A DNA stretch of 64,000 nucleotides from Macrostomum lignano (taxonomy: Eukaryota). The position numbers and the translations under genes are program-made. Below the pieces are notes generated by a model, which did no database searches, was not told where the DNA came from, and saw only the letters and a list, made by a program, of their open reading frames with translations. Shown here in pieces: positions 5,845 through 41,600 of this stretch. Within the stretch, counting starts at the first letter, position 1, and each line of letters begins with the position of its first letter. The stretch spans positions 310,001-374,000 of the forward strand of contig NIVC01000260.1 in assembly GCA_002269645.1 (NCBI GenBank). The letters run 5' to 3'.

Positions 5845-8800
5845 TCAACGCTTCATAGCCTGAGTCCAGTCGTGAAGAGTATCAATCAGCTGAGGCATGA
5901 AAGCTGACAGACTGTCTTGGATCACTTTCACAATATGCTGAGTGGCCTCTTCGTCAGTGAGATGCAGACAGAATCGGTCAGTCAGCTTCTTCAGCGTCTT
6001 GTCCGGCTCCATAGCGATTTCTGGCACGCTGGAGTCCAGCATGAGAGAGAACAGATTAACAATGACGCTGGCGTGCCGGCGCAGACTTTTATAAGCGGTG
6101 TCGCAGTGCTTGAGGAAGGCAATAAACTCCTGACTATCCTGACCGCCCATCGCTGCCACCATGCCGTCTGTCAGCTTCATTGGCGGCGGCATCACTTTGG
6201 GATCGCGGCCAAGAATGAAGCCGAAATCAATGTGGAACAGGCGGCCATCTCTGGTCAGCATCAGGTTGTCCAGGTGCCTGTCGCCCACACCCAGCAGGTA
6301 GGTCACTATGCAGTAGCCGGCACAGGAGCGAACATAGTTCTCTAGGACTTCCGATTTGACACCGTAGGGACTGGCTGGGCTGCTGCCGCACTGGCGCAGG
6401 TAGTTCAGTACAGAGGTTTGCACCGAGCTCAGCGGCACCTGCGGGGGGAGGCAGGTAGGGATGGAGGTGTTACAGTTGACAACTTTATTGAAGACTGTTT
6501 CAGGAAATTAAAGTTGCGGGGCTGAGACAAAACACAGGGCGAGAAAACAGATGATCGGGTGAGTGATCGAGAGATTAGAAGAGAAGAGGGAGATTAGACG
6601 TGAAAGGGAGATCACAGGTGAGAGGGAGATTAGACGTGAAAGGGAGATCACAGGTGAGAGGGAGATCACAGGTGAGAGAGGGAGATCACAGGTGAGAGGG
6701 AGATCACAGGTGAGAGAGGGAGATCACAGGTGAGAGAGGGAGATCACAGGTGAGACAGGGAGATCACAGGTGAGAGAGGGAGATCACAGGTGAGAGAGGG
6801 AGATCACAGGTGAGAGGGAGATCACAGGTGAGGGGGAGGTTAGACGTGAAAGGGAGATCACAGGTGAGAAGATCACAGGTGAGAGAGGGAGATCACAGGT
6901 GAGAGGGAGATCACAGGTGAGAGAGGGAGATCACAGGTGAGAGGGAGATCACAGGTGAGAGAGGGAGATCACAGGTGAGAGAGGGAGATCACAGGTAGAG
7001 AGGGAGATCACAGGTGAGAGGGCCATACCGAATCGATGCACTGCACAAAGCCCTGCTCGCGGCCGGTGGCCAACACCCGATAAGGCGTGAGTCTGAGATC
7101 GACATTCTCCTGCCTGAGCAGCCGGTCCATCAGCTCAATCATCTGCATCACTAACTGATCTTGCCGAAGATCGTCGCCATATTTAAATATCGTAGTGTAA
7201 GCTTTAGCGCTTCTAGGAGGCGATTTCTGCTGTTGCTGCTGCTGAGGCGCCGGTTCCAATAGGAATTTAATCCTAGCCGGCATTCGAGAACTTTTAAACA
7301 GACCAGCGGAGCGGCTGTCCAAGCCTACGGCTCTGTAGGACGGATCCAGCATGAATTGGAATGGGAAAAATGTCTGCTTGGCCAGCTTAGCCTGGTGCTG
7401 CTGCTGCTGCTCAGCTACGGTTTTTCCAACGCTGGCGTTGGCGACGGCCGATGTCGGGGAAGCCGACGCTGAGTCCCGGCGGGCGTGAGCAGCGGCGCTA
7501 GGGAATTCCTCATCTAGTCGGACTCGAAGCAGTTCCTCTTTTTTTAATCGATCGCCCCGTTCGGAGTTCACCGCGGTTAGAATTGTTGCTAGGCGAGCGA
7601 CAAAACGGTCTTGACGTTTCAGATCGAGCGCGAGGCTGCGCTGGTCCAGGTTGCCGTTTTTCAACCGCTGAAGCAGCCGGTTGCGTACCTGCCAGGTGGG
7701 GTGGGGTTTTAGAGATTGGAATGCGATTCTGAGGGATTAGAGAGCCGATTCTGAGGGATTAGAGAGCCGATTCTGAAAGATTAGAGAGGCGATTCTGAAA
7801 GATTAGAGAGGCGAATCCGGGGGATTAGTGAGGCGATTCCGAGGGATTAGAGAGGCGATTCCGGGGGATTAGAGAGCCGATTCTGAGAGATGAGAGACCC
7901 GATTCTGAGAGATGAGAGATCCGATTCTGAGAGATGAGAGATCCGATTCTGAGATATGAGAGATCCGATTCTGAGAGATGAGAGAGGCGATTCTGAGATA
8001 TGAGAGAGGCGATTATGGGGGATTAGAGAGGCGATTCCGGGGGATTAGAGAGGCGATTCTGAGGGATTAGAGAGGCGATTCTGAAAGATTAGAGAGGAGA
8101 TTCTGAGAGATGAGAGAGCCGATTCTGAGAGATGAGAGAGCCGATTCTGAGAGATGAGAGATCCGATTCTGAGTGATGAGAGATCCGATTCTGAGAGATG
8201 AGAGATCCGATTCTGAGATATGAGAGAGACGATTATGAGAGATGAGAGAGGCGATTCTGAGATATGAGAGAGGCGATTATGGGGGATTAGAGAGGCGATT
8301 CCGGGGGATTAGAGAGGCGATTCTGAGGGATTAGAGAGGCGATTCTGAGGGATTAGAGAGGCGATTGTGAAAGATTAGAGAGGCGATTCTGAGAGATTAG
8401 AGACCCGATTCTGAGATTAGAGATCCGATTCTGAGAGATGAGAGAGCCGATTCTGAGATTAGAGATCAGATTCTGAGAGATTAGAGACCCGATTCTGAGA
8501 GATGAGAGAGCCGATTCTGAGATTAGAGACATGAATCGGGGAAAATCAGTGGGTGATTCTCTATGCCGATGGGAGTAAGAGGGGCAAACTCTGATCTGAG
8601 GAGACAAAATAACAATTAAAAATTTGCACCTGTCCGAAGAACTTCTCTCCCTCGCCAGCGTCCTCAGCCTCCACAGTGAGGTACCAATAGAACAGCTGGG
8701 CCAGCCGGCCGCCCTGCCGCTTGCAGCAGTGGTCGATCAGGAAATTAGTCAGCGGCTCGTCCGAGGCGGCCCCGGCGTGTCGGCGATAACTAATCGGACC

Positions 8801-11800
8801 TTCGTCCTCGGCTAGGGCTTCGGTGAGCAGGTGCTCAACTGCCGAAGATGAAGAATTGCTTGTTGCAGATTTTTGAGATGTGGTTGCGTCGAATGTCTGC
8901 TGCTGCTGAGAAGAGATCGATGATGAGTCGGCAGAAGATGATTGCTCCTGCTGCTGCTGCTGTTGCTGCTTTCGCGAAGATGCAGGACCTCCGATAGGCG
9001 GCTGGGAGGCTGGCTGCTGGTATTCATATCGCAGCGCCTGCACCAGCTGCGGCAGGTAGAGCAACTGCGGACAGGTGGGTTATGAAATTGGGAGTGGGGT
9101 GTAAGGCACATGGAAACCTGAGTACTTCACTTCAGTCACGACCTCTGATTCGATTCCGTGAATGGAGAGTGCGATGGAGAGACGACTATTGAGTCACGAG
9201 CGCATCACGTGAGCTGTAGAATCGTAAAAGGAGTCCCCGAAATAGTCGTCCAAGACTCGCTGTGTTAGCGCGTAACTTCCTACTGACTCTCAAGTAGACT
9301 ACAGCGACTCTGGCAGGTCTCAGATACAGACTCTACGGCCACAAGAGTCGTTTCAGAGTCGCAGACTCTTACCAGTTCGTCCATAGGCGACTTGGCCAGC
9401 CTGCTGACAGCGTAGTGCCGAACAGCCGGGTGCGGGAAATCCGGCGACAGCAGCTCCAAGGCCTCGGCCGAGTCCAGGGCCTGCCAGTGCCGAATCAGGC
9501 CCAGAGCCTGCTGAACCTCGGCCGGCCTGGTGAAATCTATGCAGCGTAGAAATTTGCCCAACGCTCGCTTATAGCGGCTGAGATAGTAGCGGTACTTCCA
9601 CACCAGGTCGCGCTCCTCCATGCTGATCTCGCGGTGCGGCGGGTAAGCCATGATGGCGTGCAGGCAGTCGCGCTCGACAGCGTTCGGCTTTCGTTCGCGA
9701 TCGAATGCGCCGCGCGAGACGCCGCGCTCGATGGCGTGATGCTTCTCCTCGGACAGATTGGCCGCGTTGATGTCCGGATCGGGGCACACGACCAGGTCTG
9801 CGGGCCCGGTCTGGAGAAGGTGGGTGAAGGTCTTCTTAAGGAAACTGCTGGCAAGACATAATCATAATAATTGGGTACACCTGACCCAATCGGGCCAGAT
9901 GTGCAACCGACAGCTCAGCCGCAGCTATTGCGCGGCGCATCTGAAGGCTGCGTACGACTGCTCAGTCCAAGGACTGGGGGGGGGGGGTCGCCACACGCAC
10001 CCTCAATTACCCCAGCTAATGCTGGCACCCATTTTACAGCCGAGTGAACTGAAGCAGAGTAGAGTCAAGTGTCTTGCTCAAGGACACAAACTGTTAAAGT
10101 GTCCTTGTTAAAGTAGGACGATTTCTTAGAAAACTGGTTACAACGGCACTTTTTCAAACTTAACTGTTTTAAGAGAAAACGGTTCTAGCTTCTGTGCTAG
10201 TAGCTCGTAGTATCTGTGAAACATGTATTCTAAGTTAATTTGAAATTGTGTGTAAATATTATTCTGGCATTTAAATTAAAAATTCATTTTGCACGAAACA
10301 ACCCCCATCTGCAACTGGGCCCCGCCCTCTGTGTGAGTTGTTTAGTTCGCACATCGCATTTCAGACCAGCTTTAACACCCCATCTCTTTCTTCTATCGTC
10401 TATCAGACTGGGTAAACGATAAAACTCAATTAACACCGCAAATTGCGAGCCCGAGAGAAGAGTCATAAAACGCCTTAGCTTTTATTGTGAATGTACATTC
10501 TACACTGTACATTGGCCAAGGAGAGGCCTAAATGGTTGAACTGAAGAATTAAATTCAAACGGAGCGCCCATTGAAAGCATTAAAAAAAAGCATCGTTTTT
10601 CGAATATTTGACCCACTTCCTATTCGGATTTTTTTCTTCAAAAAAAAGTTATGCATGACCGCCGAAAAACAACAATTTTTTCAAAAAAATCGGCCAGACG
10701 GTCCTCAAAAAACAATTACTGACAGACAAACAGCGCAAAATTAGTATATAGACTAGCTATTAGCGCCCCCCCGTTGGGGACCCAACAAAGAATTGAGTAC
10801 AATATTTTTAATAAACTACATGTAGCTTCTAACCTCAGCCTTGACAGCTCAGCAATTCTCAGTGCATAGATTAGCGGTTGTTAAACACACCTGAGGCAGC
10901 AGCCGATGCGCGTCTCGTTCAAAGTACACGACCGAGTGCTCCAACGAGTCCAGCAGAAACTTCTGAAATGTCACATTAAGAAACATCAGGCCGCCACGGC
11001 GCCGCTTCTCAGCCACTATCCGCACCTCCAAATCTTTCAAAGCCAGCTGGTCCTGCCAGTCAATTTTATTGATGCTGCCCTCCGAATAGCGTTTGCGAAC
11101 TTTCAACAGGCGGGACAGCTCCGGGTAGCTGGTCTTGCCCACTTTGCCCGGCGTCACGCCCGGCTCGGCCACCTGTCCGGGCCACACAACCAGCTCGTAC
11201 ATGCCGCGGCGCATCTGGCCGCGCTTGCTGAACACAGATACACAGCTGCCGCCTATTGGTCGGCGCCTATGGGAGATTGCGGTAGCGATTAAGCTGCTGC
11301 TGTTGCTGGCTGTGCACTACTGTTAGTAGTAATATTTAGCTAAACTGGACTGAATAGGGTGTCTTGGCAATCTGGATAGCTAACGGCTGATACAGAAGGA
11401 TCTGGGAGGGTGAGATCTAGGCCCAGGCCGAGGATCTGACCAACTGAGGATCTGACCAACTGAGAATCTGACCAACTGAGAATCTGACCAACTGAGGATA
11501 TGACCAACTGAGAATCTGACCAACTGAGGATCTGACCAACTGAGAATCTGAACAACTGAGAATCTGACCAACTGAGGATCTGACCAACTGAGAATCTGAC
11601 CAACTGAGGATCTGAACAACTGAGAATCTGAACAACTGAGGATCTGACCAACTGAGGATCTGACCAACTGAGGATCTGACCAACTGAGGATCTGACCAAC
11701 TGAGAATCTGACCAACTGAGGATCTGACCAACTGAGAATCTGACCAACTGAGGATCTGAACAACTGAGGATCTGACCAACTGAGAATCTGACCAAATGAG

Positions 11801-13293
11801 GATCTGACCAACTGAGAATCTGACCAACTGAGGATCTGACCAACTGAGGATCTGACCAACTGAGGATCTGACCAACTGAGAATCTGACCAACTGAGAATC
11901 TGACCAACTGAGAATCTGACCAACTGAGAATCTGACCAACTGAGGATCTGACCAACTGAGAATCTGAACAACTGAGAATCTGACCAACTGAGAATCTGAC
12001 CAACTGAGAATCTGACCAACTGAGGATCTGACCAACTGAGGATCTGAACAACTGAGAATCTGAACAACTGAGAATCTGACCAACTGAGAATCTGACCAAC
12101 TGAGAATCTGACCAACTGAGAATCTGACCAACTGAGGATCTGACCAACTGAGAATCTGACCAACTGAGAATCTGACCAACTGAGAATCTGACCAACTGAG
12201 AATCTGAACAACTGAGAATCTGACCAACTGAGGATCTGACCAACTGAGAATCTGACCAACTGAGAATCTGACCAACTGAGAATCTGACCAACTGAGAATC
12301 TGAACAACTGAGAATCTGACCAACTGAGGATCTGACCAACTGAGAATCTGAACAACTGAGAATCTGACCAACTGAGGATCTGAACAACTGAGGATCTGAC
12401 CAACTGAGAATCTGACCAACTGAGAATCTGACCAACTGAGAATCTGAACAACTGAGAATCTGACCAACTGAGGATCTGACCAACTGAGAATCTGAACAAC
12501 TGAGAATCTGACCAACTGAGGATCTGAACAACTGAGGATCTGACCAACTGAGAATCTGACCAACTGAGAATCTGACCAACTGAGAATCTGACCAACTGAG
12601 AATCTGACCAACTGAGGATCTGACCAACTGAGAATCTGAACAACTGAGAATCTGACCAACTGAGGATCTGACCAACTGAGGATCTGACCAACTGAGAATC
12701 TGACCAACTGAGAATCTGACCAACTGAGGATCTGACCAACTGAGGATCTGAACAACTGAGAATCTGACCAACTGAGAATCTGACCAACTGAGGATCTGAC
12801 CAACTGAGGATCTGACCAACTGAGAATCTGACCAACTGAGGATCTGACCAACTGAGAATCTGACCAGCACGACAGCTCACCTGCAAGTCCCGTAGACGTC
12901 CCAGATGGTGAGGCAGAGGCAGGCGTCCCTTGGCAGCGAGGCGATGGCGGCGGGCACTGCCAGCCATTCGTTCCAAGAGTAGGGGCCCCGCCTGTTGCCA
13001 GCCAGCTTGCCAACAACGGCTCGCTGAGTCTGCCGCGGCAAAGTCAGCCGGCGACCCTCCGAGTGCAGCTCTAGGGTGACGTAGGGCGAGTCGCCGTGAA
13101 AGTTCAGCAGGGCGTCCTCCAGAGCGGACTCTGGAGTAGCAGCCAAGCCGTTCGGCTGGCAGCCTTCCAGACAGCCGATTTTCAGTTTGAGATTGCATTT
13201 GTCCAGTTCGTGAGAATAGAGCACATGGAGTACTGTGTCCTGCTGTTGCTGCTGCTGCTGCTGCTGGTACTGATAGTAATACTCCAGGTCCAT
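5845..13293 (-). CDS. PIK3C3: Class III phosphatidylinositol 3-kinase Vps34, 6 exons, ~971 aa
   Basis: Exons 13293-12881, ~11266-10891, 9810-9373, 9064-8630, 7688-7029 and 6438-5845 join in phase at GT-AG. C2 domain (WNEWL..LPRDACLCLTIWDVY, PIGGSCVSVFSKRG). Helical domain (LVWKYRYYL, LLYLPQLVQALRYE). Kinase domain (IFKYGDDLRQDQL, LTPYRVLATG, YLLGVGDRHLDN, HIDFGFILGRDPK). The exon 2 acceptor is uncertain by some tens of nt. Confidence 0.95.
6586..7020. repeat. 18-20-bp intronic minisatellite GAGAGGGAGATCACAGGTGA (PIK3C3 intron 5)
   Basis: Tandem units begin ~8 nt inside the donor at 7028. Confidence 0.9.
7723..8527. repeat. ~19-21-bp intronic minisatellite GATTCTGAGAGATGAGAGAG (PIK3C3 intron 4)
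   Basis: Degenerate tandem units fill most of the intron. Confidence 0.9.
9893..10091 (-). mobile_element. Truncated copy of SINE family A in PIK3C3 intron 2
   Basis: Closely similar to 59148-59342 (GCCAGATGTGCAACCGACAGCTCAGCCG..GCTAATGCTGGCACCCATTTTACAG..GTGTCTTGCTCAAGGACACAAA); lacks the tRNA head. Confidence 0.75.
11432..12866. repeat. 16-bp intronic minisatellite TCTGACCAACTGAG(AA/GA) (PIK3C3 intron 1)
   Basis: About 90 units, starting ~14 nt inside the donor at 12880. Confidence 0.95.
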
Positions 13294-21547: not shown

Positions 21548-22097
21548 TCAGTCAGTCAGTCAGTCAGTCAGTCAGTCAGTCAGTCAGTCAGTCAGTCAGT
21601 CAGTCAGTCAGTCAGTCAGTCAGTCAGTCAGTCAGTCAGTCAGTCAGTCAGTCAGTCAGTCAGTCAGTCAGTCAGTCAGTCAGTCAGTCAGTCAGTCAGT
21701 CAGTCAGTCAGTCAGTCAGTCAGTCAGTCAGTCAGTCAGTCAGTCAGTCAGTCAGTCAGTCAGTCAGTCAGTCAGTCAGTCAGTCAGTCAGTCAGTCAGT
21801 CAGTCAGTCAGTCAGTCAGTCAGTCAGTCAGTCAGTCAGTCAGTCAGTCAGTCAGTCAGTCAGTCAGTCAGTCAGTCAGTCAGTCAGTCAGTCAGTCAGT
21901 CAGTCAGTCAGTCAGTCAGTCAGTCAGTCAGTCAGTCAGTCAGTCAGTCAGTCAGTCAGTCAGTCAGTCAGTCAGTCAGTCAGTCAGTCAGTCAGTCAGT
22001 CAGTCAGTCAGTCAGTCAGTCAGTCAGTCAGTCAGTCAGTCAGTCAGTCAGTCAGTCAGTCAGTCAGTCAGTCAGTCAGTCAGTCAGTCAGTCAGTC
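21548..22097. repeat. Perfect (TCAG)n microsatellite, ~550 bp
   Basis: Uninterrupted tetranucleotide run. Confidence 0.98.
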
Positions 22098-22366
22098 ACG
22101 AACCAAACTATTTTTTTTGCAATTGAAACGGTGCGGCTTGTAAGCCAATGTTAATAATTTATTATGAGAAATTTTAATTGTTTAGAAACTAGCGTTACTA
22201 ATGAAATCAGGACTTAAGAGACTTAACAACAAAACAAAACTGGTTACTGATGTTGAAACTATTGCGCAATAGGAAGTCATAAAAACTTCGAGATTAACAC
22301 AACGAAACGCATATTTGGCGCCAATTCAAACACATCAACCTGCCCAAATCAATTTAACACACTCAG

Positions 22367-24469
22367 TCAACGTCGCTTGTCATTCCATCCGTGGTGCCAT
22401 TCGTAGTTCGCCGAATTTCTGTCGTAGACGTCGTAGCGATTGCCGTTGAGCAGCTCGTCCAGCAGCAGATCGACATAGTTCTCGTCGCTCATCAGCAAAT
22501 CGACAAACCAGTCGTCCGGTCTCGGACGGCTGTTGCTGACCGGATGTTTGTAGGGCCTATTTGTGAGCGTTTTGTGTTTAAAAAGTTATTGTAAATTCCA
22601 ACGGTTTGCTTAATGCAATTAGACTGTAGGTGGCAAAGCGGGTTCTTGTGTCATAGTCGTTTGTCATGACCGCAGATACTAAAATAACTAGATGGACCAC
22701 TCAGGAGGCACTTGTACTTAGTAAAGCAGCTTTTTACTTGCATTTCAGTAGCAAAGAAGAATACATAAGCTATTTTATAAAAAATAAAGGCAGCTTAAAT
22801 GACTTTGATAAGTTTAGAAGCCCAAAGCTTGCAGGCGTAAACAGCTTGCTAATTGGTTCAGCAATAATGTACATTGGCCAGTCCACTGAAATGTACATGG
22901 CAGCTTTAGGCAATAAAAATTGGGGCGGGCGGGGGGTTGTGTGGAAAGGCTCGGTTGGATGAGGGGTAAGAGCCTATAAATGAGCCTTGGCTTTAAAAAA
23001 GACATTAAAATGCTTCAGTTTAACTTACTACTGAACTGAAAGTAGCTTACACGCAAATGTGCTGAGTGGCCCATCTAGTCTAATTATTCTAGTATCTCAG
23101 TATCTGCAATTTTTTGCATCCTGAATTTGGACTCAGTTTTTTTCCCAGCTGGGTGTCATTTAATTCAGTTCTATGTTAAACTCATATTTCCTTTAAAATA
23201 TCAATACTGGATACTGGGATTCTCAATATTTCAAGGCCTCTACTCTAAAAATTGTAAACTTTGATTAATTTGTAAACCTGAAGTCCGCAGATTTTCTGCA
23301 ACTTCTATGGGTGAGAGCTAGACTGCTCAGCAGTCGAAAGGGTCGAGTAGAGTATCCAGATGGCACTGTGATTCTGACGCTTAAGAAAAAATCGAGGTAG
23401 CAAATATGAATTGTGTTTCAAATACCTGCGACTTTCGATGGGTCCCTCGTCGGCAATGATGCCATCTCCGGCGTAGTTTGAGCTCGCCAACTTCCCTCCT
23501 TCATAGTCTCGACTCCGCCTGTCGTTCTTAGCCTTGATGCCGTCATTGTTGTTGCTGCTGCTGTAGTCAGTTCTGCCGCTGTATGCACTGGACTTGGTTG
23601 CCAGGTCCTTTCCTGGCTTCTCATTGTAGTAAATCTCGATGGGTTGCTTCTTTCGATTGTATTCGTTCTCCAACTCTCTGTTGCTGACATCATTGTAACG
23701 TTTAATGCTGGGTCTTTGCTTAGCGTTGTTGTACTTGTTGTCAACTTCTCTGTTGTTGTACTTGTTGTCAACTTCTCTGTTGTTGTACTTGTTGTCAATT
23801 TCTCTGTTGTTGTTGTACTTGTTGTCAACTTCTAGGTTATTGTTGTACTTGTTGTCAACTTCTCGGTTGTTGTTGTACTTGTTGTCAACTTCTCTGTTGT
23901 TGTTGTACTTGTTGTCAACTTCTCTGTTGTTGTTGTACTTGTTGTCAACTTCTCGGTTGTTGTTGTACTTGTTGTCAACTTCTCTGTTGTTGTTGTACTT
24001 GTTGTCAACTTCTCTGTTGTTGTTGTACTTGTTGTCAACTTCTCTGTTGTTGTACTTGTTGTCAACTTCTCTGTTGTTGTTGTACTTGTTGTCAACTTCT
24101 CTGTTGTTGTTGTACTTGTTGTTAACTTCTCTGTTGTTGTTGTACTTGTTGTCAACTTCTCTGTTGTTGTTGTACTTGTTGTCAACTTCTCTGTTGTTGT
24201 ACTTGTTGTCAACTTCTCTGTTTTTGTTGTACTTGTTGTCAACTTCTCTGTTGTTGTTGTACTTGTTGTCAACTTCTCTGTTGTTGTTGTACTTGTTGTC
24301 AACTTCTCTGTTGTTGTACTTGTTGTCAACTTCTCTGTTGTTGTTGTACTTGTTGTCAACTTCTCTGTTGTTGTTGTACTTGTTGTCAACTTCTCTGTTG
24401 TTGTTGATTTTGTATCTGTTGAGAGCTTCTCGGTTGCTGTTGTATTCATATCTGTCGTTAACTTCTCGG

Positions 24470-24528
<59 letters not shown>

Positions 24529-25251
24529 GGTGGTGTATCTGTTGTCAGCTTCTCGGTGGTTTTTGTTGTTGTTGTTGTGGTCGAATTTATTGTCAACTTC
24601 TCGGTTGTTGTGGTTGTTGTGGTTGTTGTATTTTTTGTTGTCTTCTCGGTTGTTGTGGTTTTGGTTGTTGTATTTGTTGTCAGCTTCTCGGTTGTTGTGG
24701 TTGTTGTTGTTGTCGTTGGATTTGGTATCAACTTCTCGGTTGTTGTTGTTGTATTTGTTGTCAGCTTCTCGGTTGTTGTGTTTGTGGTTGTTGTATTTGT
24801 TGCCAACTTCAAGGTTGTCGCTGTACTTGTTATCTCTGCGGTTGTTGTGAATGTTGCTATTGGTGCTGCTTTGATATTGGGCATCTGAAGCTTCTTCGCC
24901 ATTCGGCATTTTATTGTAGTTCTCTTTCTTCACTTTGTTGTTATTGCTAATCTCACTGTTGCCAACTCCAATCTTCCTTTCGTTCAAAATAGTTCTTTTC
25001 TGCTCCTGATGCTCGCTTCGACTCTCGCTTTTGTGCCGGCGTTCTTCTTGACGGTTGAAATGATGATGTTCGGCTAAGCTTCTGGATGCAACATCAACTG
25101 CCTCCGGACTCTTGGGTGGCGGTGGCGGTGGCGGTGGCGGTGGCGGAGGCCCACGCTCTGATCCTCCCAGCATCCAGGAGAGACCTTCAGCAGCGGGTGC
25201 CACAGACGCCAGTAGAACAATGGCAAATGCAAGTTTACAGAAAAGATGCAT
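22367..25251 (-). CDS. Secreted Asn-rich tandem-repeat protein, 2 exons (25251-23426, 22556-22367), ~671 aa
   Basis: Signal-peptide-like start MHLFCKLAFAIVLLASVAPAAEG. About 23 N(N)NREVDNKY units whose length changes are all multiples of 3. A phase-2 donor CGCAG|GTATTT at 23426/23425 joins acceptor AATAG|G at 22557/22556, giving a non-repetitive tail ..PDDWFVDLLMSDENYVDLLLDELL..EWHHGWNDKRR*. Confidence 0.75.
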
Positions 25252-25808
25252 GATTTTTTAAAATGATAATAATAGACAAGAAGGTAGGCTCTTTTCATTA
25301 AAATTACCTGACTTTTAAGACACTTTCTTAGTCCGATCAAGCCAGAATACTTGTACATCGAATTGCATGGCTTTGTACGTAGTTGATTGAGTCATTCTAT
25401 CTGTTCAGTGTAGATTTTTGCCAGCGAAGAATTAAAAAGGGGTGCTTGGTTTGATTGAAGGCGGCGCTTTCAGTGTACATCTAGCTGTACAGCCTCAAAC
25501 CCTTACCCCGTAGGTCAGACAGGCTCGCGCAATGATTTCTACTCCCCTCTCCCCGAGGCGATCGCTGATTGGCTGGTGTGAAAAAGCCGACTTCGCACTC
25601 CTCTTGTTAGCTTGAAAGATAGGCTTTGAACGGAAACCAAAGTGGATTTAGGAACGTCATATCAGAAACGTTTTTGCGTTGCAAAACAAAACACCGTTGA
25701 GTATAATTCAGTATATTTATTATAACTTCATTGTACTAGAAATTTTCCTTGCAAAGTGATATAATAAAGCGGTAGTTTATTATCACAATAAGAACAGTTT
25801 TTTTGGAT

Positions 25809-28800
25809 CTACTTTGCCCATTTTCCAACTCCGGGACGAATTCCGCGCGCATTGATGACTTCATCAACTACCGCTTGCTTCGTCTCGTTCCACTCCTTGG
25901 CTGACTCTTGGACTACGTACTCGCGTTCGACTTCCTCCTGAATTGAGTCAAAGGTTGACGGGTTTGTCATTTACTAGTACATTGTCTACGGTGCTAGACA
26001 ATGTAGATGCACTGAGTATGATAATAAATCAAGTTTGCTGGTAATTAATAAACGAAACTAAACGAGATGCCATGGCTCAAGGGGAGTTGCTGAGATGCCA
26101 TGGCTGAAGGGGAGTTGCTGAGAGTCATGGCTCAAGGGGAGTTGCTGAGAGTCATGGCTCAAGGGGAGTTGCTGAGATGGCATGGCTCAAGGGGAGTTGC
26201 TGAGATGCCTTGGCTCAAGGGGAGTTGCAGAGATGCCATGGCTCAAGGGGAGTTGCTGAGATGCCTTGGCTGAAAAGACAAGAAAATCAAGTTCGCAATG
26301 TTTTTGTAGTAGATCAAAAACTTCAGCGAGCACCCCAAACGCCCACCTGCGGCATTTTCCCAAGGCTGGCATCGGCCGACTGTCCAATCAGTAGCCGAGT
26401 GTCCGAGTCCAGCTCGGCCAGCTTGTCCGGCCGGAGTACAGCCATTCGGACAGTGTCCGTCTCTGCGATGAGAGTGCACGGCATGTCCTCCTGATCTAGC
26501 AGGGAGGCTTCCCCGAACGACTGCTTCGGCCCGATGCGACTCATGACGATGTGGGCGGTGCGCTGCACCTCCTGCCCATTTTTCAGAGTCTTGTTCGCGA
26601 CCAGCTTGCGCAGGAGGAGGCAGGTACCCGATTGGATGTAGCCTAGAAGCGCAACGGGGGGAGGGGCGCAGGGTGAGTCATCAGTTTTCAAGCAATATTT
26701 GTTTCACTTGCTGTTTTCATGTAACTCACTGTTCATCCAAATGTCAATCCTTATGGATAACAATGTCACTATTCTTTTCAATTTCACTCTATATTCACCC
26801 CAATTTCACCCTTGCTTATTACCACTGTCACTCTGTGTGCTCATCCATACTGTCACTCTGTGTGCTCATTCCTACTGTCACTCTGTGAGCTCATCTATAC
26901 TGTCACTCTGTGTGCTCATCCCTACTGTCACTCTGTGTGCTCATCCCTACTGTCACTCTATGTGCTCATCCCTACTGTCACTCTGTGTGCTCATCCCTAC
27001 TGTCACTCTGTGTGCTCATCCCTACTGTCACTCTGTATGCTCATCCCTACTGTCACTCTGTGTGCTCATCCCTACAGTCATCTGTGTGCTCATCCCTACA
27101 GTCATCTGTGTGCTCATCCCTACAGTCATCTGTGTGCTCATCCCTACAGTCATCTGTGTGCTCATCCCTACTGTCACTCTGTGTGCTCATCCCTACTGTC
27201 ACTCTGTGTGCTCATCCCTACTGTCACTCTGTGTGCTCATTCCTATTGTCACTCTGTGTGCTCATTCCTATTGTCACTCTGTGTGCTCATCTCTACTGTC
27301 ACTCTGTGTGCTCATCAATACTGTCATCTGTGTGCTCCTACTGTCACTGTGTGTGCTCATCCCTACTGTCACTCTGTGTGCTCATCAATACTGTCACTCT
27401 GTGTGCTCATCAATACTGTCACTCTGTGTGCTCATCCCTACTGTCACTCTGTGTGCTCATCCCTACTGTCACTCTGTGTGCTCATCAATACTGTCACTCT
27501 GTGTGCTCATCAATACTGTCACTCTGTGTGCTCATCCCTACTGTCACTCTGTGTGCTCATCAATACTGTCACTCTGTGTGCTCATCAATACTGTCACTCT
27601 GTGTGCTCATCCCTACTGTCACTCTGTGTGCTCATCCCTACTGTCACTCTGTGTGCTCATCAATACTGTCACTCTGTGTGCTCATCAATACTGTCACTCT
27701 GTGTGCTCATCCCTACTGTCACTCTGTGTGCTCATCAATACTGTCACTCTGTGTGCTCATCAATACTGTCACTCTGTGTGCTCATCCCTACTGTCACTCT
27801 GTGTGCTCATCAATACTGTCACTCTGTGTGCTCATCGTTTCTGCCCAACTTACCAATAAAAGGTGCCTTGAAGCCTTCGCTGGCAATGACGCTATTGGCT
27901 GGCACGGTCAGCCAATCGACCAGCCGAACGACCTTCAGCAGCGGCTGTCGTGACCAGAGCGTGTAGCCCGGGTTCTCAAGCAGCAGGCCAACCTTCTCAG
28001 TCTCGTCCTTGTTCTCCAGCTGCTGTTTGAGTCGCTGATAATCGTAGGAAGAAATCTTTAAAAACTCGCTGCCATCGTCAGGGAGATACACTGAGAGAAT
28101 CTTATCGCCGGAACGCGGCTGCTCCGTGTACTTTAGCGTGCCGAACATTTCGCCGACTTTGATCTGGGGTAGGGGGGGCGGTGAAAGAAAGATTGGAAAG
28201 ATTTTGTCATTTGTAAAATTCTTAAAACGATAGAGAGATGCAGTGAGGGATAAAGGGAGGAAGGTAGGGATGAAGAGATGCAGGGAGGGATGGGAAGATA
28301 AAGGTAGGAATGGAGAGATGCAGGGAGGGATGAGAGATGCAGGGAGAAATGGAGAGATGCAGGGAGGGATGAAGAGATGCAGGGAGGGATGGAGAGATGC
28401 AGGGAGAAATGGAGAGATGCAGGGAGGGATGAAGAGATGCAGGGAGGGATGGAGAGATGCAGGGAATGATGGAGAGATGCAGGGAGGGATGGAGAGATGC
28501 AGGGAATGATGGAGAGATGCAGGGAGGGATGGAGAGATGCAGGGAATGATGGAGAGATGCAGGGAATGATGGAGAGATGCAGGGAGGGATGGAGAGATGC
28601 AGGGAATGATGGAGAGATGCAGGGAGGGATGGAGAGATGCAGGGAATGATGGAGAGATGCAGGGAGGGATGGAGAGATGCAGGGAGAAATGGAGAGATGC
28701 AGGGAATGATGGAGAGATGCAGGGAGGGATGGAGAGATGCAGGGAATGATGGAGAGATGCAGGGAATGATGGAGAGATGCAGGGAGGGATGGAGAGATGC

Positions 28801-30722
28801 AGGGAATGATGGAGAGATGCAGGGAGGGATGGAGAGATGCAGGGAATGATGGAGAGATGCAGGGAGGGATGGAGAGATGCAGGGAATGATGGAGAGATGC
28901 AGGGAGGGATGGAGAGATGCAGGGAATGATGGAGAGATGCAGGGAATGATGGAGAGATGCAGGGAGGGATGGAGAGATGCAGGGAATGATGGAGAGATGC
29001 AGGGAGGGATGAAGAGATGCAGGAAGGGATGAAGAGAAAAAGTGGAGTAAAACTCGATCTACTCACCACCTGCTGCTCATCCTTCTCCAGCGTCCGGCAG
29101 CGTTCAATAAAAGCGGCCTCGTCCGCATCGTCCATGCCGTGCATAGAAGGCTCGGTGAGCGCCACCGCGCAGCCGTGCAGCACCAGGAACAAAGACCCGT
29201 GCGCCAGCAGGGTGACGTCACCTTCCGGCCATCGTTCCAGTTTAACAACTGTAGCCAGCTCTTTCAGTAGACTGTCCGACACTTGACTGCTCAACGGTTC
29301 GATGTTGCGCATCAGCTGGTAGATTTTGTCGTTCTCCTCGGCGGTTCTCTCATACATTGGCTGTTTGAGCAGCCGGCGGAGGGCCTGCACCACCGCGTGC
29401 TTGGTGGGCTTGGCGGCCGCTGCTGCTGCGGTTGGTGGGGGGGGGTGCAGCAGGAGCTGGGCTTAGCCAGTTGCTAGGCAGTTAAAGTAGAAGGACGCGC
29501 ACTAAAATCGCCAAATCATTGACAAAGCACGAATGTGTTCTGTCCGAGGTGCACTCAAAAGTTTATCAAGCTATTTTTATAGCTGACGGGCAAACTTCCC
29601 GCGAAATTTTGACTGTTCATTCAGTAAATTCATTCAGTTGAGTATTACTATTTCGATCTCGATTTTAACGTCATCTGACACCAGATTTGGCGCTCATCTG
29701 ACACCCGATTTGGCGCTCATCTGACACCCGATTTGGCGCTCATCTGACACCCGATTTGGCGCTCATCTGACACCAGATTTGGCGCTCATCTGACACCCGA
29801 TTTGGCGCTCATCTGACACCCGATTTGGCGCTCATCTGACACCCGATTTGACGCTCATCTGACACCCGATTTGGCGCTCATCTGACACCTGATTTGGCGC
29901 TCATCTGACACCCGATTTGGCGCTCATCTGACACCCGATTTGGCGCTCATCTGACACCCGATTTGACGCTCATCTGACACCCGATTTGGCGCTCATCTGA
30001 CACCCGATTTGGCGCTCATCTGACACCTGATTTGGCGCTCATCTGACACCCGATTTGGCGCTCATCTGACACCCGATTTGGCGCTCATCTGACACCCGAT
30101 TTGACGCTCATCTGACACCCGATTTGGCGCCATCTGATACCCGATTTGGCGCTCATCTGACACCCGATTTAGCGCTCACCTGATACCCGATTTGGCGCTC
30201 ATCTGACACCCGATTTGGCGCCAAGCGACACATGAATTAGACATAATAAAGTCTACAATAATGGAAAACTTCCTTTTGGATAAATGCGCTTTGCCCTGCG
30301 AGAACTGACCTACAGTGGGAGTGTAACAACACAACACAATCGTGCCGATCAATCGCTCATGGAAGCTACTATAAGTAGAAACAGATGAACTTCCAATAAC
30401 AATAGCAGCAATTAAGTAGGATTGTCACTTGCCAACTTTGCTATTGGCGTGGGCCCGCCTGGTGAACTCGCGAATGTCGTGCGGCTTGTACTCGATGGCC
30501 AGCAGGGAGCCTCCGCCGCCCGGCTGTTGCTGGGCGCAGCAGCTCCGGTCGGCTGGCAGCTCGGCGGCAGGCGGCTGAGTGATTCTCAAACTAGCCCGGT
30601 CGGAGAACCGCTTCTCGGTGTGCAACGGCGGCAGGCGGCTCGGGGCTGCCGAGTCGACGAAAACTCGGTGATAATTGCGCATCACTTCGGCGTGCGCATC
30701 GGCCGTGCTGCGCTTTTGCAAA
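25809..30722 (-). CDS. CNBD1: Cyclic nucleotide-binding domain protein, CNBD1-like
   Basis: Exons ~30722-30435 (5' structure uncertain), ~29458-29067, 28163-27854, 26642-26347 and 25937-25809; the last three junctions are in phase. Segments LKQPMYERTAEE..LKELATVVKLERW, GEMFGTL..EFLKIS, FIGYIQSGTC..QSFGEASLL..PCTLIA recall the two cNMP-binding domains of CNBD1. It ends GIRPGVGKWAK*. Confidence 0.75.
26069..26270. repeat. ~28-bp intronic minisatellite CATGGCTCAAGGGGAGTTGCTGAGATGC
   Basis: About 7 tandem units in the last CNBD1-like intron. Confidence 0.85.
26820..27836. repeat. 25-bp intronic minisatellite TACTGTCACTCTGTGTGCTCATC(CC/AA)
   Basis: Starts ~16 nt inside the donor at 27853. Confidence 0.92.
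28244..29035. repeat. 20-bp intronic minisatellite GGAGAGATGCAGGGA(GG/AT)GAT
   Basis: Fills most of intron 29066-28164. Confidence 0.92.
29672..30222. repeat. 23-bp minisatellite ATCTGACACCCGATTTGGCGCTC (array 1)
   Basis: About 24 units; the same unit recurs at 32660-32978. Confidence 0.93.
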
Positions 30723-38613: not shown

Positions 38614-41600
38614 ATGCTGAGGATCGGCTTGCTACCACAGTGGCTTCTAGTAGCAGCAATGAGTGCTGTTCTGCTGCAGCCAATGGGCTCCGAGGCCCAA
38701 GCAGCAGCCCCTCGGCACACGGTCAACCTGACCAACGGCTCCAGCATCCAAGGCTTCACCAGCACAGTCCGCAGCCGAACGGTGTGGAGCTACCTGGGCA
38801 TTCCCTACGCCAAGCCGCCCGTGGGAGCGCTGCGCTTCAAGCCCTCGGTGCCGCTGGACTCACCTATTGGCAACAGCAGCATGCCATACGATGCCTCGAA
38901 GAAACCGCAGACCTGCTACTACTGGCCCCTGCTTCCGCAGGAGTTCGAAAAGACGGTGAGTCTTTGATGTTTTTTGATCGATTTGGTTTTGTTTTTTAAT
39001 GACTTGGTTTTGTTCGCAACAGGGGATATCATTTACAAGGAATTTGAATGTATTTGAGTAACGCGGGTCTACATCTTTTGAGTGCTAGCCAACGAGTTGA
39101 AGTGTGTGTTCCGGACACCTTCTGCCCGGAACACACAGTGCCACATTTCTAGCGACACATTTCTAGCGACACATTTCTAGCGACAAATTTCTAGCGACAC
39201 ATTTCTAGCGACACATTTCTAGCGATATCTTTCTAGCGACACATTTCTAGCGACACATTTCTAGCGACACATTTCTAGCGACACATTTCTAGCGACACAT
39301 TTCTAGTGCCACATTTCTAGCGACACATTTCTAGCGACACATTTCTAGCGACACATTTCTAGCGACACATTTCTAGCGACATCTTTCTAGCGACACATTT
39401 CTAGCGACACATTTCTAGCGACACATTTCTAGCGACACATTTCTAACGACGCATTGTGACCAATTCCTTGGTGATATAAAAAGTCAGGGGGCCACTGTGT
39501 TTTCATCTGTGCAACTTTGTTTCACAAAAACGATTTGAAGGCTTATGAATTAAACTAATAAAGCAATAAAACGGATTGCTATTTTTGTGTATAAAATTGT
39601 GCTGTATTTTCTATTTAAAGCCGTGTAGAGTTTTCTTGGAAAGTTTTCTAAGAAACAGATAGTGCGCGTCTGTCTACGTCCCGGCGGACTGTCCTGCTAA
39701 GACGCAATAAACTTCATAAACTATTCGACTGCAGCAACAACTCTCTCTCTCCCGCGCAGAACCCGGCCCTGATGATGTGGTGGAACAACACCGAGATGTC
39801 CGAGGACTGCCTCTACCTAAACGTCTGGTCGCCAACTTCTGACTCCGCTGCTGGCAAGGCCGTCATGGTGTGGATCTACGGTGGCGGCTTCTTCGGCGGC
39901 TCGTCCTCGCTCGAAGTCTACGACGGCGCGGTGCTGGCGGCGACTGGCGACGTTGTTGTCGCCTCGATGCAGTACCGGACTGGAGCGCTCGGCTTCATGT
40001 TCTTGGACGACACCGAGGCACCGGGGAATGCGGGACTGTACGACCAGTACAGAGCGATTCAGTGGATTCACGAAAATATTCGGTGAGTGAAGTAACTGTA
40101 GTGTATTTTTTGGGTTGCATGGCCTAACTCAGTGAGTAGCTGCTCCAATTCAGTCATGGATCGTTATCGCTTCACTTCAAAATCCTTTGGCTTGTTCTCC
40201 GTCTACTGGTTTGCAACTTACTACTGAATTGCGCTAAGTAGTAGCTACCGATTTTCCCAAGTTTACGGGTACTATCATATCTGACTTGTTTCAATGCCAA
40301 CAGTGCCTTCGGCGGAGACAACAGCCAGATCACGCTGTTCGGCGAGTCAGCCGGTGCCGTGTCAGTCAGCTACCACCTGCTGTCGCCCTACACTCAGGGC
40401 TACTTCAGGCGAGCCATACTTAACAGTGGCAGTGCCATCGCCTGGTGGGCCAGCGAGGACCGATCGACTGGATGGAGCAAATCCCTGGCGCTGGCCGACC
40501 TGGCCAAATGCCGTCCGGACTACACGAGAGACGGAATCAAAATTGCCAACTGCCTGCGCCAGGTAACGCCCGAGCTGCTGCAACAGCATACCTGGAACGC
40601 CATGAGCAACGTGTTTAAGGCGAGGAAGCAGAGCTACTCTCGCTACTATCAGCAGAATCTGAGGCGATATCAGGAATCCGGCAACAGCGCAGCCATTGCC
40701 AATTTAGAGACGGCGCTGTTTTTCGACGTGCCGTTCAAACCAGTCTTTGGCTCGGATTTCCTGCCGAAAGTGCCGGTAGAGCAGCTGAGAGACTCGAAAA
40801 TGAACAATGATGTCAAGAAGGCGGACTTGTTGTTGGGTAAGCGTTAAATTCTATGCTTTTGAGATAGTTGCTGTTAGCTTCCCGATTTAGGCACTTAATT
40901 AAGCTTTACCTTAAGTCTCGAGCCTCTTCTCTCGGAAGCTTCTTATTACATGTAGCTCTTAGTAGCGTCGGTAGTGCTGCCACCAGTTCCTTCAGGTCTC
41001 GGCCTTCGGTGAGGTGAGCTTCCCGTCGGAACGAAATAAACAAGTCAACGAACTCAGCACAGCGTGCAGATTAATGAACAAGGCCAGCATATCACGCCGG
41101 GCTCAGGGGGTGGCTGGGAAAGCAGTGTTAGCCTCTCTTAGGCTTTGGCGTCTAAGTTTAGTCAGGCCAATTAGCTCGTACAGATAGTTTAAGCGGGCAA
41201 CTGAACGAAGTCTGGAAAACTAGACTAAAGAAGAACAACAATAACAAAAATCTTTGACTGAACCAAGGGTGAGGGGCACGTATTTATAGGCAGGAAATCC
41301 CCGCTGCGCTAGTGTGCACCGGACCTCGTGACTCTGTTCTATTTTTAGAACTGACGTCACCCTCCGCCTTAGAGAAGGCAGGGTCTGCGGGTAAAGTGCA
41401 CTGGGCCGCATGACTCAGTATCTATTTTTAGAAACATGAGTCACCTGTTACCTTAGAGAAGGCAAGGGCCCCGAAGCACGTGATTTCTCCCGTTAACACG
41501 GGCCAACGAGTGCAGTAAGCATGTTTACTGCACTTTAGGACTTCGAGAAAACAAGACTTGTCAGGTGACTTGCTCACATGACAAGGGAAACAGGCCGCCA

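What the first reader, a model, noticed from the sequence alone, without database searches (positions are those of the whole stretch)
22367..25251. Unrecognised secreted protein built of ~23 NNREVDNKY repeats with a hidden second exon
Seen: signal peptide, poly-Pro, a charged spacer, degenerate then near-perfect N(N)NREVDNKY repeats, and a poly-Asn run. A spliced acidic tail not in the ORF track (DDWFVDLLMSDENYVDLLLDELL..EWHHGWNDKRR) ends in a basic cluster. Repeat length changes are strictly in-frame (27 versus 30 bp), unlike the intronic arrays. Inference: a gland-secreted structural material. One Tyr and one Lys per repeat would suit DOPA/quinone cross-linking as in flatworm eggshell proteins, and the Asn richness would suit amyloid-like assembly (rhabdite, mucus or cocoon). 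A peptide precursor cut at single basic residues is the alternative. It does not resemble the Lys/Arg-rich or glycosylated adhesive proteins I know from Macrostomum.
Basis: partly seen in the sequence, partly recalled or inferred. Interest (0 to 1): 0.7.

Follow-up and report, generated by a model that had tools for sequence, protein, structure and literature searches.

The report
Orphan secreted asparagine-rich repeat protein
A small two-exon animal gene appears to encode a secreted, floppy, asparagine-rich protein made of about 33 copies of a 9-10 residue unit; nothing like it is in any database searched, and its function can only be guessed from its composition.

Summary
On the minus strand an ATG at 25251 opens an ORF with a signal-peptide-like N-terminus, P12, a charged/His spacer, about 10 degenerate units, an N20 run and 23 near-identical NN(N)REVDNKY units (18 of 30 bp, 5 of 27 bp).

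The proposed junction (CAG|GTATTT at 23426, AATAG|G at 22556) is in frame. It leads into a 62-codon GC-rich island with a strong codon-usage signal, a stop, and AATAAA 204 nt further on. The read-through extension and the whole intron score as non-coding. No RNA data were available, so splicing and expression remain inferred.

The 671-aa product matches no Pfam family, no PDB chain, and nothing among 5.8 billion proteins or 1.84 billion representatives. It is an orphan.

The mature protein has no Cys and no N-X-S/T sequon despite 182 Asn (5.8 expected), which fits passage through the ER. The repeat unit has no net charge and is 40% charged, which argues against amyloid and for a soluble disordered chain with regular Tyr/Arg/Lys.

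The eggshell and adhesive families fail their membership tests. "Gland-secreted material" is plausible but untested. The 27/30 bp in-frame argument is weak, because the length change is slippage of an AAC triplet. Ordinary kind, new family; modest interest.

The parts
25252..25700 (-). Presumed promoter / 5' region, lying between the upstream gene's poly(A) signals and the ATG. It contains CCAATCAG at 25572-25565, A/T-rich stretches at 25318-25312 and 25260-25254, and A at -3 of the ATG.
   Evidence: Read directly from the sequence. The upstream cNMP-binding gene ends with its own terminal exon 25970..25809 and AATAAA motifs near 25775 and 25725. Promoter function is inferred and was not tested.
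23426..25251 (-). Exon 1 coding sequence (1826 nt; 608 codons plus 2 bases).
   Evidence: ORF. Codon log-odds are best in this frame in all four segments: N-term -0.9 vs -23/-51; degenerate repeats +61; array +104; C-terminal non-repeat +19.7 vs -24/-37.
25183..25251 (-). Signal-peptide-like N-terminus (residues 1-23, MHLFCKLAFAIVLLASVAPAAEG).
   Evidence: Hydropathy profile and the -3/-1 rule. The h-region is about 15 residues, too short for a membrane anchor. No SignalP run was possible.
25114..25149 (-). Poly-proline run, P12, encoded by (CCGCCA)6.
   Evidence: (TRF period 6, 6 copies).
24847..25113 (-). Charged, His-containing spacer (residues 47-135) with four dibasic sites.
24407..24846 (-). 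Ten degenerate repeat units (RRDNKY, LEVGNKY, READNKY, REVDTKS, REDNKKY, REVDNKF, READNRY, REVNDRY, REALNRY...) with Asn/His spacers of variable length. The region includes the N20 run at 24469-24528.
23725..24406 (-). Near-perfect array of 23 units NN(N)REVDNKY: 18 of 30 bp and 5 of 27 bp. It shows partial 117-bp higher-order periodicity.
   Evidence: TRF and the unit table. There are 8 substitutions in 682 bp: 3 synonymous, plus 4 amino-acid replacements, one of which (R>L, AGA>CTA) took two base changes.
23427..23724 (-). Post-array non-repeat region of exon 1 (residues 510-608). It is Tyr/Ser/Lys-rich and ends in RR at the exon junction.
22557..23425 (-). Intron (869 nt), GTATTT...AATAG.
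   Evidence: GC 0.38. Coding score is negative or near zero (at most +3.6 bits) in every 90-nt window. Of the three in-phase GT donors nearby, only this one has a consensus-like context. Local introns for comparison: TCG|GTATGG...CGCAG|G and CAG|GTGGGC...TTCAG|G.
22367..22556 (-). Exon 2 (190 nt), encoding an acidic tail: PYKHPVSNSRPRPDDWFVDLLMSDENYVDLLLDELLNGNRYDVYDRNSANYEWHHGWNDKRR, then TGA at 22369-22367.
   Evidence: Codon log-odds +25.5 bits in the model frame vs -11.5 and -9.5. GC 0.547, GC3 0.73. Net charge -4, pI 5.1. Two short low-confidence helices fall on the duplicated [FY]VDLL..DE motif.
22158..22366 (-). 3' UTR with ATTAAA (22178-22173) and AATAAA (22163-22158).
   Evidence: GC 0.32. 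The (TCAG)138 microsatellite begins just beyond, at 22098.

Best explanation
This is a real, lineage-restricted (orphan) two-exon gene. Its product enters the secretory pathway through a cleavable signal peptide.

The mature protein has these properties:
- About 78 kDa, Cys-free, and free of N-glycosylation sequons.
- Intrinsically disordered: P12, then a charged spacer, then about 33 copies of a net-neutral, well-mixed polyampholyte unit (N2-3, R+, E-, V, D-, N, K+, Y).
- An acidic, Leu/Trp/Tyr-containing C-terminal module encoded by exon 2. It is separated from the rest by an RR site at the exon junction and ends in KRR.

Most likely (inferred) it is a gland or secretory-granule cargo that acts as a hydrophilic matrix. 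The regularly spaced Tyr and Arg/Lys would act as weak 'stickers' between Asn 'spacers', allowing dense reversible packing (condensate-like) in granules. The Tyr/Lys might also allow later cross-linking. The acidic tail would be a sorting, solubilising or cleaved pro-segment.

The near-perfect array is a young, concertedly evolving coding minisatellite whose copy number probably varies between individuals.

Shown here: the anatomy, the coding signal, the lack of homologues, the composition and the sequon absence. Inferred: expression, splicing, secretion, tissue and material function.
For: Gene reality:
- The three non-repeat pieces (134 + 99 + 62 codons) are open in one frame. Naive chance is 3.5e-7.
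- That frame has the best codon log-odds in every segment.
- An in-frame stop lies 3 codons upstream of the ATG.
- The upstream gene terminates independently.

Exon 2:
- The GT-AG junction is in frame.
- It is the only consensus-like in-phase donor.
- There is a sharp GC/GC3 and coding-score island.
- A stop and AATAAA at +204 follow.
- The read-through extension scores -5.7 bits.

Secretion:
- The N-terminus has an n/h/c layout.
- There are 0 N-X-S/T sequons among 182 Asn, against 5.8 expected from within-region shuffles (P(0) = 6.5e-4). S/T sit next to Asn at other offsets.
- The mature chain has no Cys.

Disorder and polyampholyte character:
- AF2 gives mean pLDDT 38 and no secondary structure in the repeats.
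- The unit has no net charge, with 4 of 10 residues charged.

Orphan status: no Pfam family, no PDB match, and no hits.

Young array: 8 substitutions in 682 bp and a partial 117-bp higher-order period.
Against: - No transcript, peptide or orthologue evidence exists, so expression and the junction are unverified.
- The source organism is absent from the protein collection. 'No homologue' therefore means none outside its close relatives, and conservation could not be assessed.
- Among seven degenerate cores I count about 3 synonymous against 12 non-synonymous differences. Individual residues are therefore not visibly under purifying selection.
- The N-terminal segment has only a neutral codon score (-0.9).
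- The sequon test was chosen post hoc, and its shuffle null ignores the relatedness of the repeats.
- AF2 without an alignment is weak evidence of disorder.
- The sticker-spacer/condensate mechanism rests on analogy only.
Confidence: 0.55

Rival explanations
1. Eggshell or cement precursor hardened by DOPA/quinone tanning. Tyr in each unit would be hydroxylated to DOPA, oxidised, and cross-linked to Lys of neighbouring chains.
For: There is one Tyr and one Lys in each 9-10 residue unit, and Tyr is 10% of the array. The protein has a signal peptide and a Cys-free mature chain, as do most trematode vitelline proteins (PMC11727788). The DOPA-Lys/His chemistry is established for trematode eggshells.
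Against: No trematode eggshell synthesis (TES) domain or any other Pfam match was found. Tyr is 7.0% overall, against 12-15% in typical vitelline proteins. Gly is only 2.7%, whereas schistosome p14-type proteins are Gly-rich (my recollection). Asn at 27% is not a feature of known tanned proteins. No tyrosinase or tyrosine hydroxylase was seen among the neighbouring genes that were checked. No expression data exist.
Confidence: 0.12
2. Fast-evolving reproductive secretion, such as a prostate/seminal-fluid or female-tract gland protein. Such a protein would have lineage-restricted sequence and variable repeat number, shaped by sexual selection rather than by a structural role.
For: The protein is an orphan and is predicted to be secreted. 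It carries a young expandable array and shows near-neutral change in the older units. Reproduction-related secreted genes of Macrostomum are reported to evolve rapidly and to turn over (PMC7336406, PMC8662610 and PMC10092323, listed). This applies only if the window really is from that genus.
Against: The organism could not be verified and there are no expression data. The same features fit any gland product.
Confidence: 0.13
3. Functional secreted amyloid, in which Asn ladders drive cross-beta assembly of the repeats (in rhabdites, mucus or cocoon).
For: Asn is 27% of the protein and there is an N20 run. Tyr recurs regularly.
Against: Four of the ten residues in each unit are charged. Known prion-like or amyloid-prone N/Q-rich domains are poor in charged residues (established knowledge; PAPA/PLAAC-type composition rules). 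The unit length varies (9 or 10 residues), which is awkward for a regular solenoid. AF2 predicts no strands. Only the N20 tract is a credible nucleus.
Confidence: 0.07
4. Prohormone-like precursor that is cut into many small peptides and/or releases the C-terminal 62-residue acidic peptide.
For: The protein has a signal peptide. It has 11 dibasic sites, including RR exactly before the exon-2 tail and a terminal KRR that a carboxypeptidase would trim.
Against: There is no dibasic site and no amidation Gly inside any of the 23 perfect units, so the repeats would not be released by classical convertases. The units are unlike known flatworm neuropeptides. At 78 kDa the protein is large for a neuropeptide precursor.
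Confidence: 0.06
5. Not a functional gene, or a different gene model. One version is a minisatellite that expanded inside a decaying or never-translated ORF. Another is that only the unspliced 648-aa ORF is used and 'exon 2' is a chance island.
For: The genome is saturated with tandem arrays, about a third of which have periods divisible by 3. A second frame is open through almost the whole array. There are no homologues and no transcript evidence. An ATTAAA lies in the intron 141 nt after the read-through stop.
Against: The non-repeat flanks are open and score best by codon usage in one common frame. The N-terminus looks like a signal peptide. Sequons are avoided. Exon 2 has a 25-bit frame-specific coding signal that begins at the acceptor, whereas the read-through tail scores negative and is hydrophobic junk (YLKHNSYLLPRFFLKRQNHSAIWILYSTLSTAEQSSSHP).
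Confidence: 0.07

Closest known systems
Trematode eggshell (vitelline) precursor proteins, e.g. Fasciola vitelline protein B, with the TES domain IPR012615
   Same: Both are secreted flatworm-type structural precursors. Both are Cys-free and carry Tyr and Lys that could undergo DOPA-quinone cross-linking (PMC11727788).
   Different: This protein has no TES domain and no sequence similarity. It has 7% Tyr rather than 12-15%, 27% Asn, and is about 78 kDa rather than about 29 kDa. It is built of 9-10 residue tandem units.
Mussel foot protein 1-type decapeptide-repeat adhesives
   Same: Both have a signal peptide followed by tens of tandem ~10-residue units, each carrying Tyr and Lys. Both are disordered and are stored in gland granules (own knowledge).
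   Different: The unit here is net-neutral and Asn-rich and contains no Pro/Hyp or Ser/Thr. Mfp-1 is strongly basic and heavily hydroxylated. There is no sequence relationship, and DOPA was not tested.
Macrostomum adhesive proteins Mlig-ap1 / Mlig-ap2
   Same: Both are secreted, highly repetitive, low-complexity gland proteins of a free-living flatworm (PMC8621496).
   Different: ap1 has Gly/Arg/Lys-rich regions plus EGF, TSP-1 and lectin domains. ap2 is 14,794 aa long, has 221-255 aa repeats and is glycosylated. This protein has 9-10 aa units, no known domain and no sequon.
Tyr/Arg 'sticker-spacer' low-complexity domains (FUS family) and secreted coacervating proteins
   Same: Tyr and Arg are evenly spaced and separated by polar spacers (here Asn). 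The chain is predicted to be disordered. This grammar is known to drive phase separation (own knowledge).
   Different: Those domains are mostly intracellular, Gly/Ser/Gln-rich and poor in acidic residues. Here each unit also carries Glu and Asp, and the protein is predicted to be secreted. The behaviour was not tested.
Asn-rich tandem-repeat proteins of Plasmodium and Dictyostelium
   Same: Both have high Asn content, homopolymeric Asn runs and repeat arrays driven by AAC/AAT slippage.
   Different: Those arise in very AT-rich genomes and are mostly insertions in housekeeping proteins. Here the window is 47% GC, and the repeat makes up the body of a dedicated secreted protein.

Membership tests
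Trematode eggshell / vitelline proteins (TES domain) | Conserved trematode eggshell synthesis domain (IPR012615) | tested here: not met
   A Pfam-A scan of the full protein, the tail and the N-terminus at E<=1 gave no such hit. No homologue was found.
Trematode eggshell / vitelline proteins (TES domain) | Tyr about 12-15% of residues (PMC11727788) | tested here: not met
   Tyr is 47 of 671 residues, or 7.0%. It is 10.3% within the perfect array.
Trematode eggshell / vitelline proteins (TES domain) | Tyr converted to DOPA; expression in vitelline or shell-forming cells | not testable with these tools
   This needs mass spectrometry or amino-acid analysis, plus in situ hybridisation.
Macrostomum adhesive proteins Mlig-ap1/ap2 | EGF/TSP-1/C-lectin/vWD-type domains with GRK-rich regions (ap1), or 221-255 aa repeats with glycosylation (ap2) | tested here: not met
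   There are no Pfam domains. The unit is 9-10 aa. Gly is 2.7%. There are zero N-glycosylation sequons, and the units contain no Ser or Thr.
Mfp-1-like DOPA decapeptide-repeat adhesives | Tandem ~10-residue units, each containing Tyr and Lys | tested here: met
   There are 23 units of 9-10 residues, each with one Tyr and one Lys.
Mfp-1-like DOPA decapeptide-repeat adhesives | Pro/Hyp-rich, strongly basic unit (pI about 10) | tested here: not met
   The unit contains no Pro and has no net charge. The array has pI 7.8.
Neuropeptide / prohormone precursor | Signal peptide | tested here: inconclusive
   A classical n/h/c layout is seen by hydropathy and the -3/-1 rule. No dedicated predictor was available.
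Neuropeptide / prohormone precursor | Repeated peptide copies flanked by dibasic cleavage sites, often with Gly for amidation | tested here: not met
   All 11 dibasic sites lie outside the 23 perfect units. No unit contains a Gly-basic motif.
Prion-like / amyloid-forming N/Q-rich domain | High N/Q content | tested here: met
   Asn is 27% of the protein and there is an N20 run.
Prion-like / amyloid-forming N/Q-rich domain | Few charged residues | tested here: not met
   Four of the ten residues in every unit are charged (R, E, D, K).

The most novel reading that the evidence does not exclude
The protein is the matrix of a flatworm-specific secretory organelle or envelope (rhabdite, eggshell granule or cement). 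It would represent a new class of unglycosylated, Cys-free, Asn-spaced Tyr/Arg/Lys polyampholyte biomaterial. It would be packed as a condensate in granules and would solidify after release. The acidic exon-2 module would act as a removable solubility or sorting switch.
Probability: 0.15. Interest if true: 0.6.

Novelty: new member of a known kind. Interest (0 to 1): 0.3.

Why it matters
If the gene is expressed as modelled, it is a clean and compact example of how a coding minisatellite builds a lineage-specific secreted protein. It has an old degenerate array, a young homogenised array and non-repeat ends.

It is also a candidate component of an uncharacterised invertebrate secretion. The combination of extreme Asn content with complete sequon avoidance, no Cys, and a neutral polyampholyte unit with periodic Tyr is unusual. 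It gives a simple, synthesisable 10-mer for testing phase separation or cross-linking.

The find is modest. Orphan repetitive secreted proteins are common in invertebrate glands, and nothing here yet points to a new principle.

Tried and rejected
- Homology searches, all empty:
  - Pfam on the full protein, the tail and the N-terminus. The only result was a sub-threshold poly-Pro artefact, Mito_fiss_reg (21 bits against a cut-off of 26.3).
  - Word-indexed search of 5.8 billion proteins with the 162-aa tail and the full 671 aa.
  - Full phmmer of the tail against 1.84 billion representatives.
  - Back-translated scan of metagenome contigs.
  - PDB sequences, where the best hits had E>0.2 and were low-complexity artefacts.
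  - Exact look-up of the 648-aa ORF.
  - Literature search for REVDNKY.
- Organism identification. The window's Vps34 exon finds only 57-59% identical proteins, so the source genome is not in the collection. Rfam found nothing in the window.
- Paralogues. tblastn of the three protein parts against the window found none.
- Exon 2 as the terminal exon of the upstream cNMP-binding gene. Rejected, because that gene has its own terminal exon, stop and AATAAA upstream of our ATG.
- Alternative splice pairs. The other in-phase donors (GAA|GTTGGC, GCA|GTCTAG) lack consensus. In-frame downstream acceptors at 22535, 22529 and 22520 cannot be excluded, but they lie inside the coding island.
- Alternative T-rich frame (TTTEKLTTS). 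It is open for 356+136 codons, but it has strongly negative codon scores and no signal peptide. Its openness follows from the scarcity of hydrophobic codons in the main frame.
- Structure prediction. AF2 on the full protein gave pLDDT 38. On the tail it gave pLDDT 53 with two short helices. Both are too weak for a fold search, so none was run.
- Amphipathicity of the tail. The helical hydrophobic moment is only moderate, 0.30-0.36.
Full report
**What is there.**
On the minus strand an ATG at 25251 has A at -3 and an in-frame TAA three codons upstream. It opens a 648-codon ORF.

In order, the product has these parts:
- A signal-peptide-like start, MHLFCK-LAFAIVLLASVAPAA-EG. The 9-residue hydropathy mean reaches 3.14, and small residues sit at -3/-1 for cleavage after A20 or G23.
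- P12, encoded by (CCGCCA)6.
- A charged, His-containing spacer.
- Ten degenerate units (RRDNKY, LEVGNKY, READNKY, REVDTKS, REDNKKY, REVDNKF, READNRY, REVNDRY, REALNRY), with an N20 run among them.
- 23 near-identical NN(N)REVDNKY units.
- A 99-residue non-repeat stretch.
- The 62-residue tail encoded by exon 2.

TRF places the array at 23725-24406 with period 30, 23.2 copies and score 1203. It also reports a 117-bp period. Unit by unit there are 18 units of 30 bp and 5 of 27 bp. Only 8 substitutions occur in 682 bp: 3 synonymous, plus 4 amino-acid replacements (one of them a two-base change).

**Is it more than chance, and is it coding?**
The array by itself is weak evidence, for three reasons:
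- The window holds about 30 tandem arrays with periods from 4 to 61, and roughly a third are divisible by 3.
- Two of the three minus-strand frames are open through the array.
- The 27/30 difference is one AAC lost from an (AAC)3 run. Length changes in threes are therefore what slippage would produce without any selection.

The real evidence lies in the non-repeat parts:
- The N-terminal 134 codons, the post-array 99 codons and the 62 exon-2 codons are all open in the one frame that the array and the junction preserve. Naive chance is 3.5e-7, given a stop-triplet frequency of 0.049.
- With a codon table trained on other exons of this window, the model frame scores best in every segment:

| Segment | Model frame (bits) | Other two frames (bits) |
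|---|---|---|
| N-terminal non-repeat | -0.9 | -23, -51 |
| Degenerate repeats | +61 | -46, -128 |
| Perfect array | +104 | -99, -229 |
| Post-array non-repeat | +19.7 | -24, -37 |

Against strong residue-level constraint, I count about 3 synonymous and 12 non-synonymous differences among seven degenerate cores. What is kept is the frame, the composition, the R-E start, the charge pattern and a terminal aromatic, not the exact residues.

**The second exon.**
The donor is CAG|GTATTT and the acceptor is AATAG|G. Two introns of neighbouring genes in this window look similar: TCG|GTATGG...CGCAG|G and CAG|GTGGGC...TTCAG|G.
- Seven GT dinucleotides lie near the end of exon 1. Three are in phase, and only 23426 has a consensus-like context.
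- Exon 2 scores +25.5 bits (0.41 per codon) in the model frame, against -11.5 and -9.5 in the other frames.
- No 90-nt window of the intron rises above about +3.6 bits, and most are strongly negative. The read-through extension scores -5.7.
- GC is 0.547 (GC3 0.73) in exon 2, 0.38 in the intron and 0.32 in the 3' UTR.
- The frame opens only 10 codons upstream of the acceptor. It ends in TGA, followed by ATTAAA at +189 and AATAAA at +204.
- The upstream cNMP-binding gene (Pfam) has its own terminal exon 25970..25809, its own stop and its own AATAAA motifs before our ATG. Exon 2 is therefore not its last exon.

I could not reach any transcript data, so the junction remains a well-supported prediction. 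In-frame acceptors a few codons downstream (22535, 22529, 22520) cannot be excluded.

**Relatives.**
None were found. The empty searches were:
- Pfam.
- The PDB.
- 5.8 billion proteins searched with the tail and with the full protein.
- A filter-free phmmer search of the tail against 1.84 billion representatives.
- Metagenome contigs.
- An exact look-up of the ORF.
- The window itself, for paralogues.

There is a caveat. The window's own Vps34 finds nothing above 59% identity, so the source organism and its close kin are not in the collection. 'Orphan' here means no detectable relative outside that lineage.

**What the protein would be like.**
- The mature chain is 648 aa and about 78 kDa. It has pI 8.6 and no Cys, with 27% Asn and 7% Tyr.
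- Each unit carries R+, E-, D- and K+ (net 0, 40% charged) plus one Tyr.
- The tail has net charge -4 and pI 5.1. It holds an internal duplication, [FY]VDLL..DE. AF2 places two short, low-confidence helices on that duplication.
- AF2 on the whole chain gives pLDDT 38 and no structure in the repeats.
- All 11 dibasic sites lie outside the perfect units. One (RR608-609) sits exactly at the exon junction, and the protein ends in KRR.
- There is not a single N-X-S/T sequon among 182 Asn. Shuffling within the non-array regions gives 5.8 on average and zero in only 0.065% of trials. S/T do occur at offsets -1, -3, +1 and +2 from Asn. The test was chosen post hoc and its null is generous. Even so, sequon avoidance is what one expects of an Asn-rich chain that passes through the ER and must stay unglycosylated.

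**Mechanism.**
My best reading is a secreted, disordered, hydrophilic polyampholyte with regularly spaced Tyr and Arg/Lys. This 'sticker-spacer' layout is of the kind known to favour reversible condensation (own knowledge). On this reading the protein is stored in gland granules, and the acidic tail acts as a sorting, solubilising or cleavable module. Tyr/Lys cross-linking after release is possible.

This is inference from composition. The tissue and the role are unknown.

The rival readings fare as follows:
- Eggshell reading: no TES domain, and 7% Tyr against 12-15% (PMC11727788).
- Macrostomum adhesives: none of the domains, repeat sizes or glycosylation (PMC8621496).
- Amyloid: disfavoured by the 40% charged units, although the N20 tract could nucleate.
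- Classical peptide precursor: fails because the units lack dibasic sites and Gly.

**Verdict.**
The gene model is well supported in silico. The functional interpretation is plausible in outline (secreted material) but unsupported in its specifics.

The protein belongs to a familiar kind, lineage-specific repetitive secreted proteins, though it founds its own family. Interest is modest.

Noticed in passing
window 22367-25251 (whole CDS): There are no N-X-S/T sequons despite 182 Asn. Within-region shuffles give 5.8 on average, with P(0) about 6.5e-4. S/T occur at every other nearby offset from Asn. This suggests selection against N-glycosylation.
   Followed up: yes
window 23418-24902, minus strand, +1 frame: A second, Thr-rich frame (TTTEKLTTS...) is open for 356+136 codons. 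It is broken only by one TAG, which was created by the R>L change in unit 20. Its codon scores are strongly negative, and its openness follows from the lack of hydrophobic codons in the main frame. It is probably not dual coding.
   Followed up: partly
window 21548-22098: A perfect (TCAG)138 microsatellite (100% matches) starts about 60 nt after the gene's AATAAA signal.
   Followed up: no
whole window, e.g. 11430-12866, 26824-27836, 55936-58052: Tandem arrays are extraordinarily dense (about 30 arrays, periods 4-61). Most lie in introns of conserved genes. Examples are 16 bp x 90 in the Vps34 gene and 10 bp x 210 in a carboxylesterase gene.
   Followed up: partly
window 25809-26691 and 27819-29393, minus strand: The upstream neighbour is a cyclic-nucleotide-binding-domain gene. 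Its last intron (CAG|GTGGGC...TTCAG|G) holds a 28-bp array. Its terminal exon ends at 25809 and is followed by AATAAA motifs only about 500 bp before our ATG.
   Followed up: partly
window 5845-13293, minus strand: This is a class III PI3-kinase (Vps34) gene. The best database identity is only 57-59% (molluscs, crustaceans), which shows that the source organism is absent from the protein collection.
   Followed up: partly
window 40359-42527 and 53639-61632, plus strand: Two tandem carboxylesterase-family paralogues. A reverse-transcriptase fragment (45488-45973) lies between them.
   Followed up: partly
window 22430-22510, minus strand: Exon 2 has an internal duplication at both the DNA and the protein level (TTTGTCGATTTGCTG...GACGAG / TATGTCGATCTGCTG...GACGAG, i.e. 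FVDLLMSDE / YVDLLLDE). Each copy is predicted as a short helix at low confidence.
   Followed up: partly
window 23725-24406: The 27-bp units sit at positions 4, 8, 13, 22 and 23 of the array. This gives two clean 117-bp (30+30+30+27) higher-order copies at its 5' end, a sign of block duplication by unequal exchange.
   Followed up: partly
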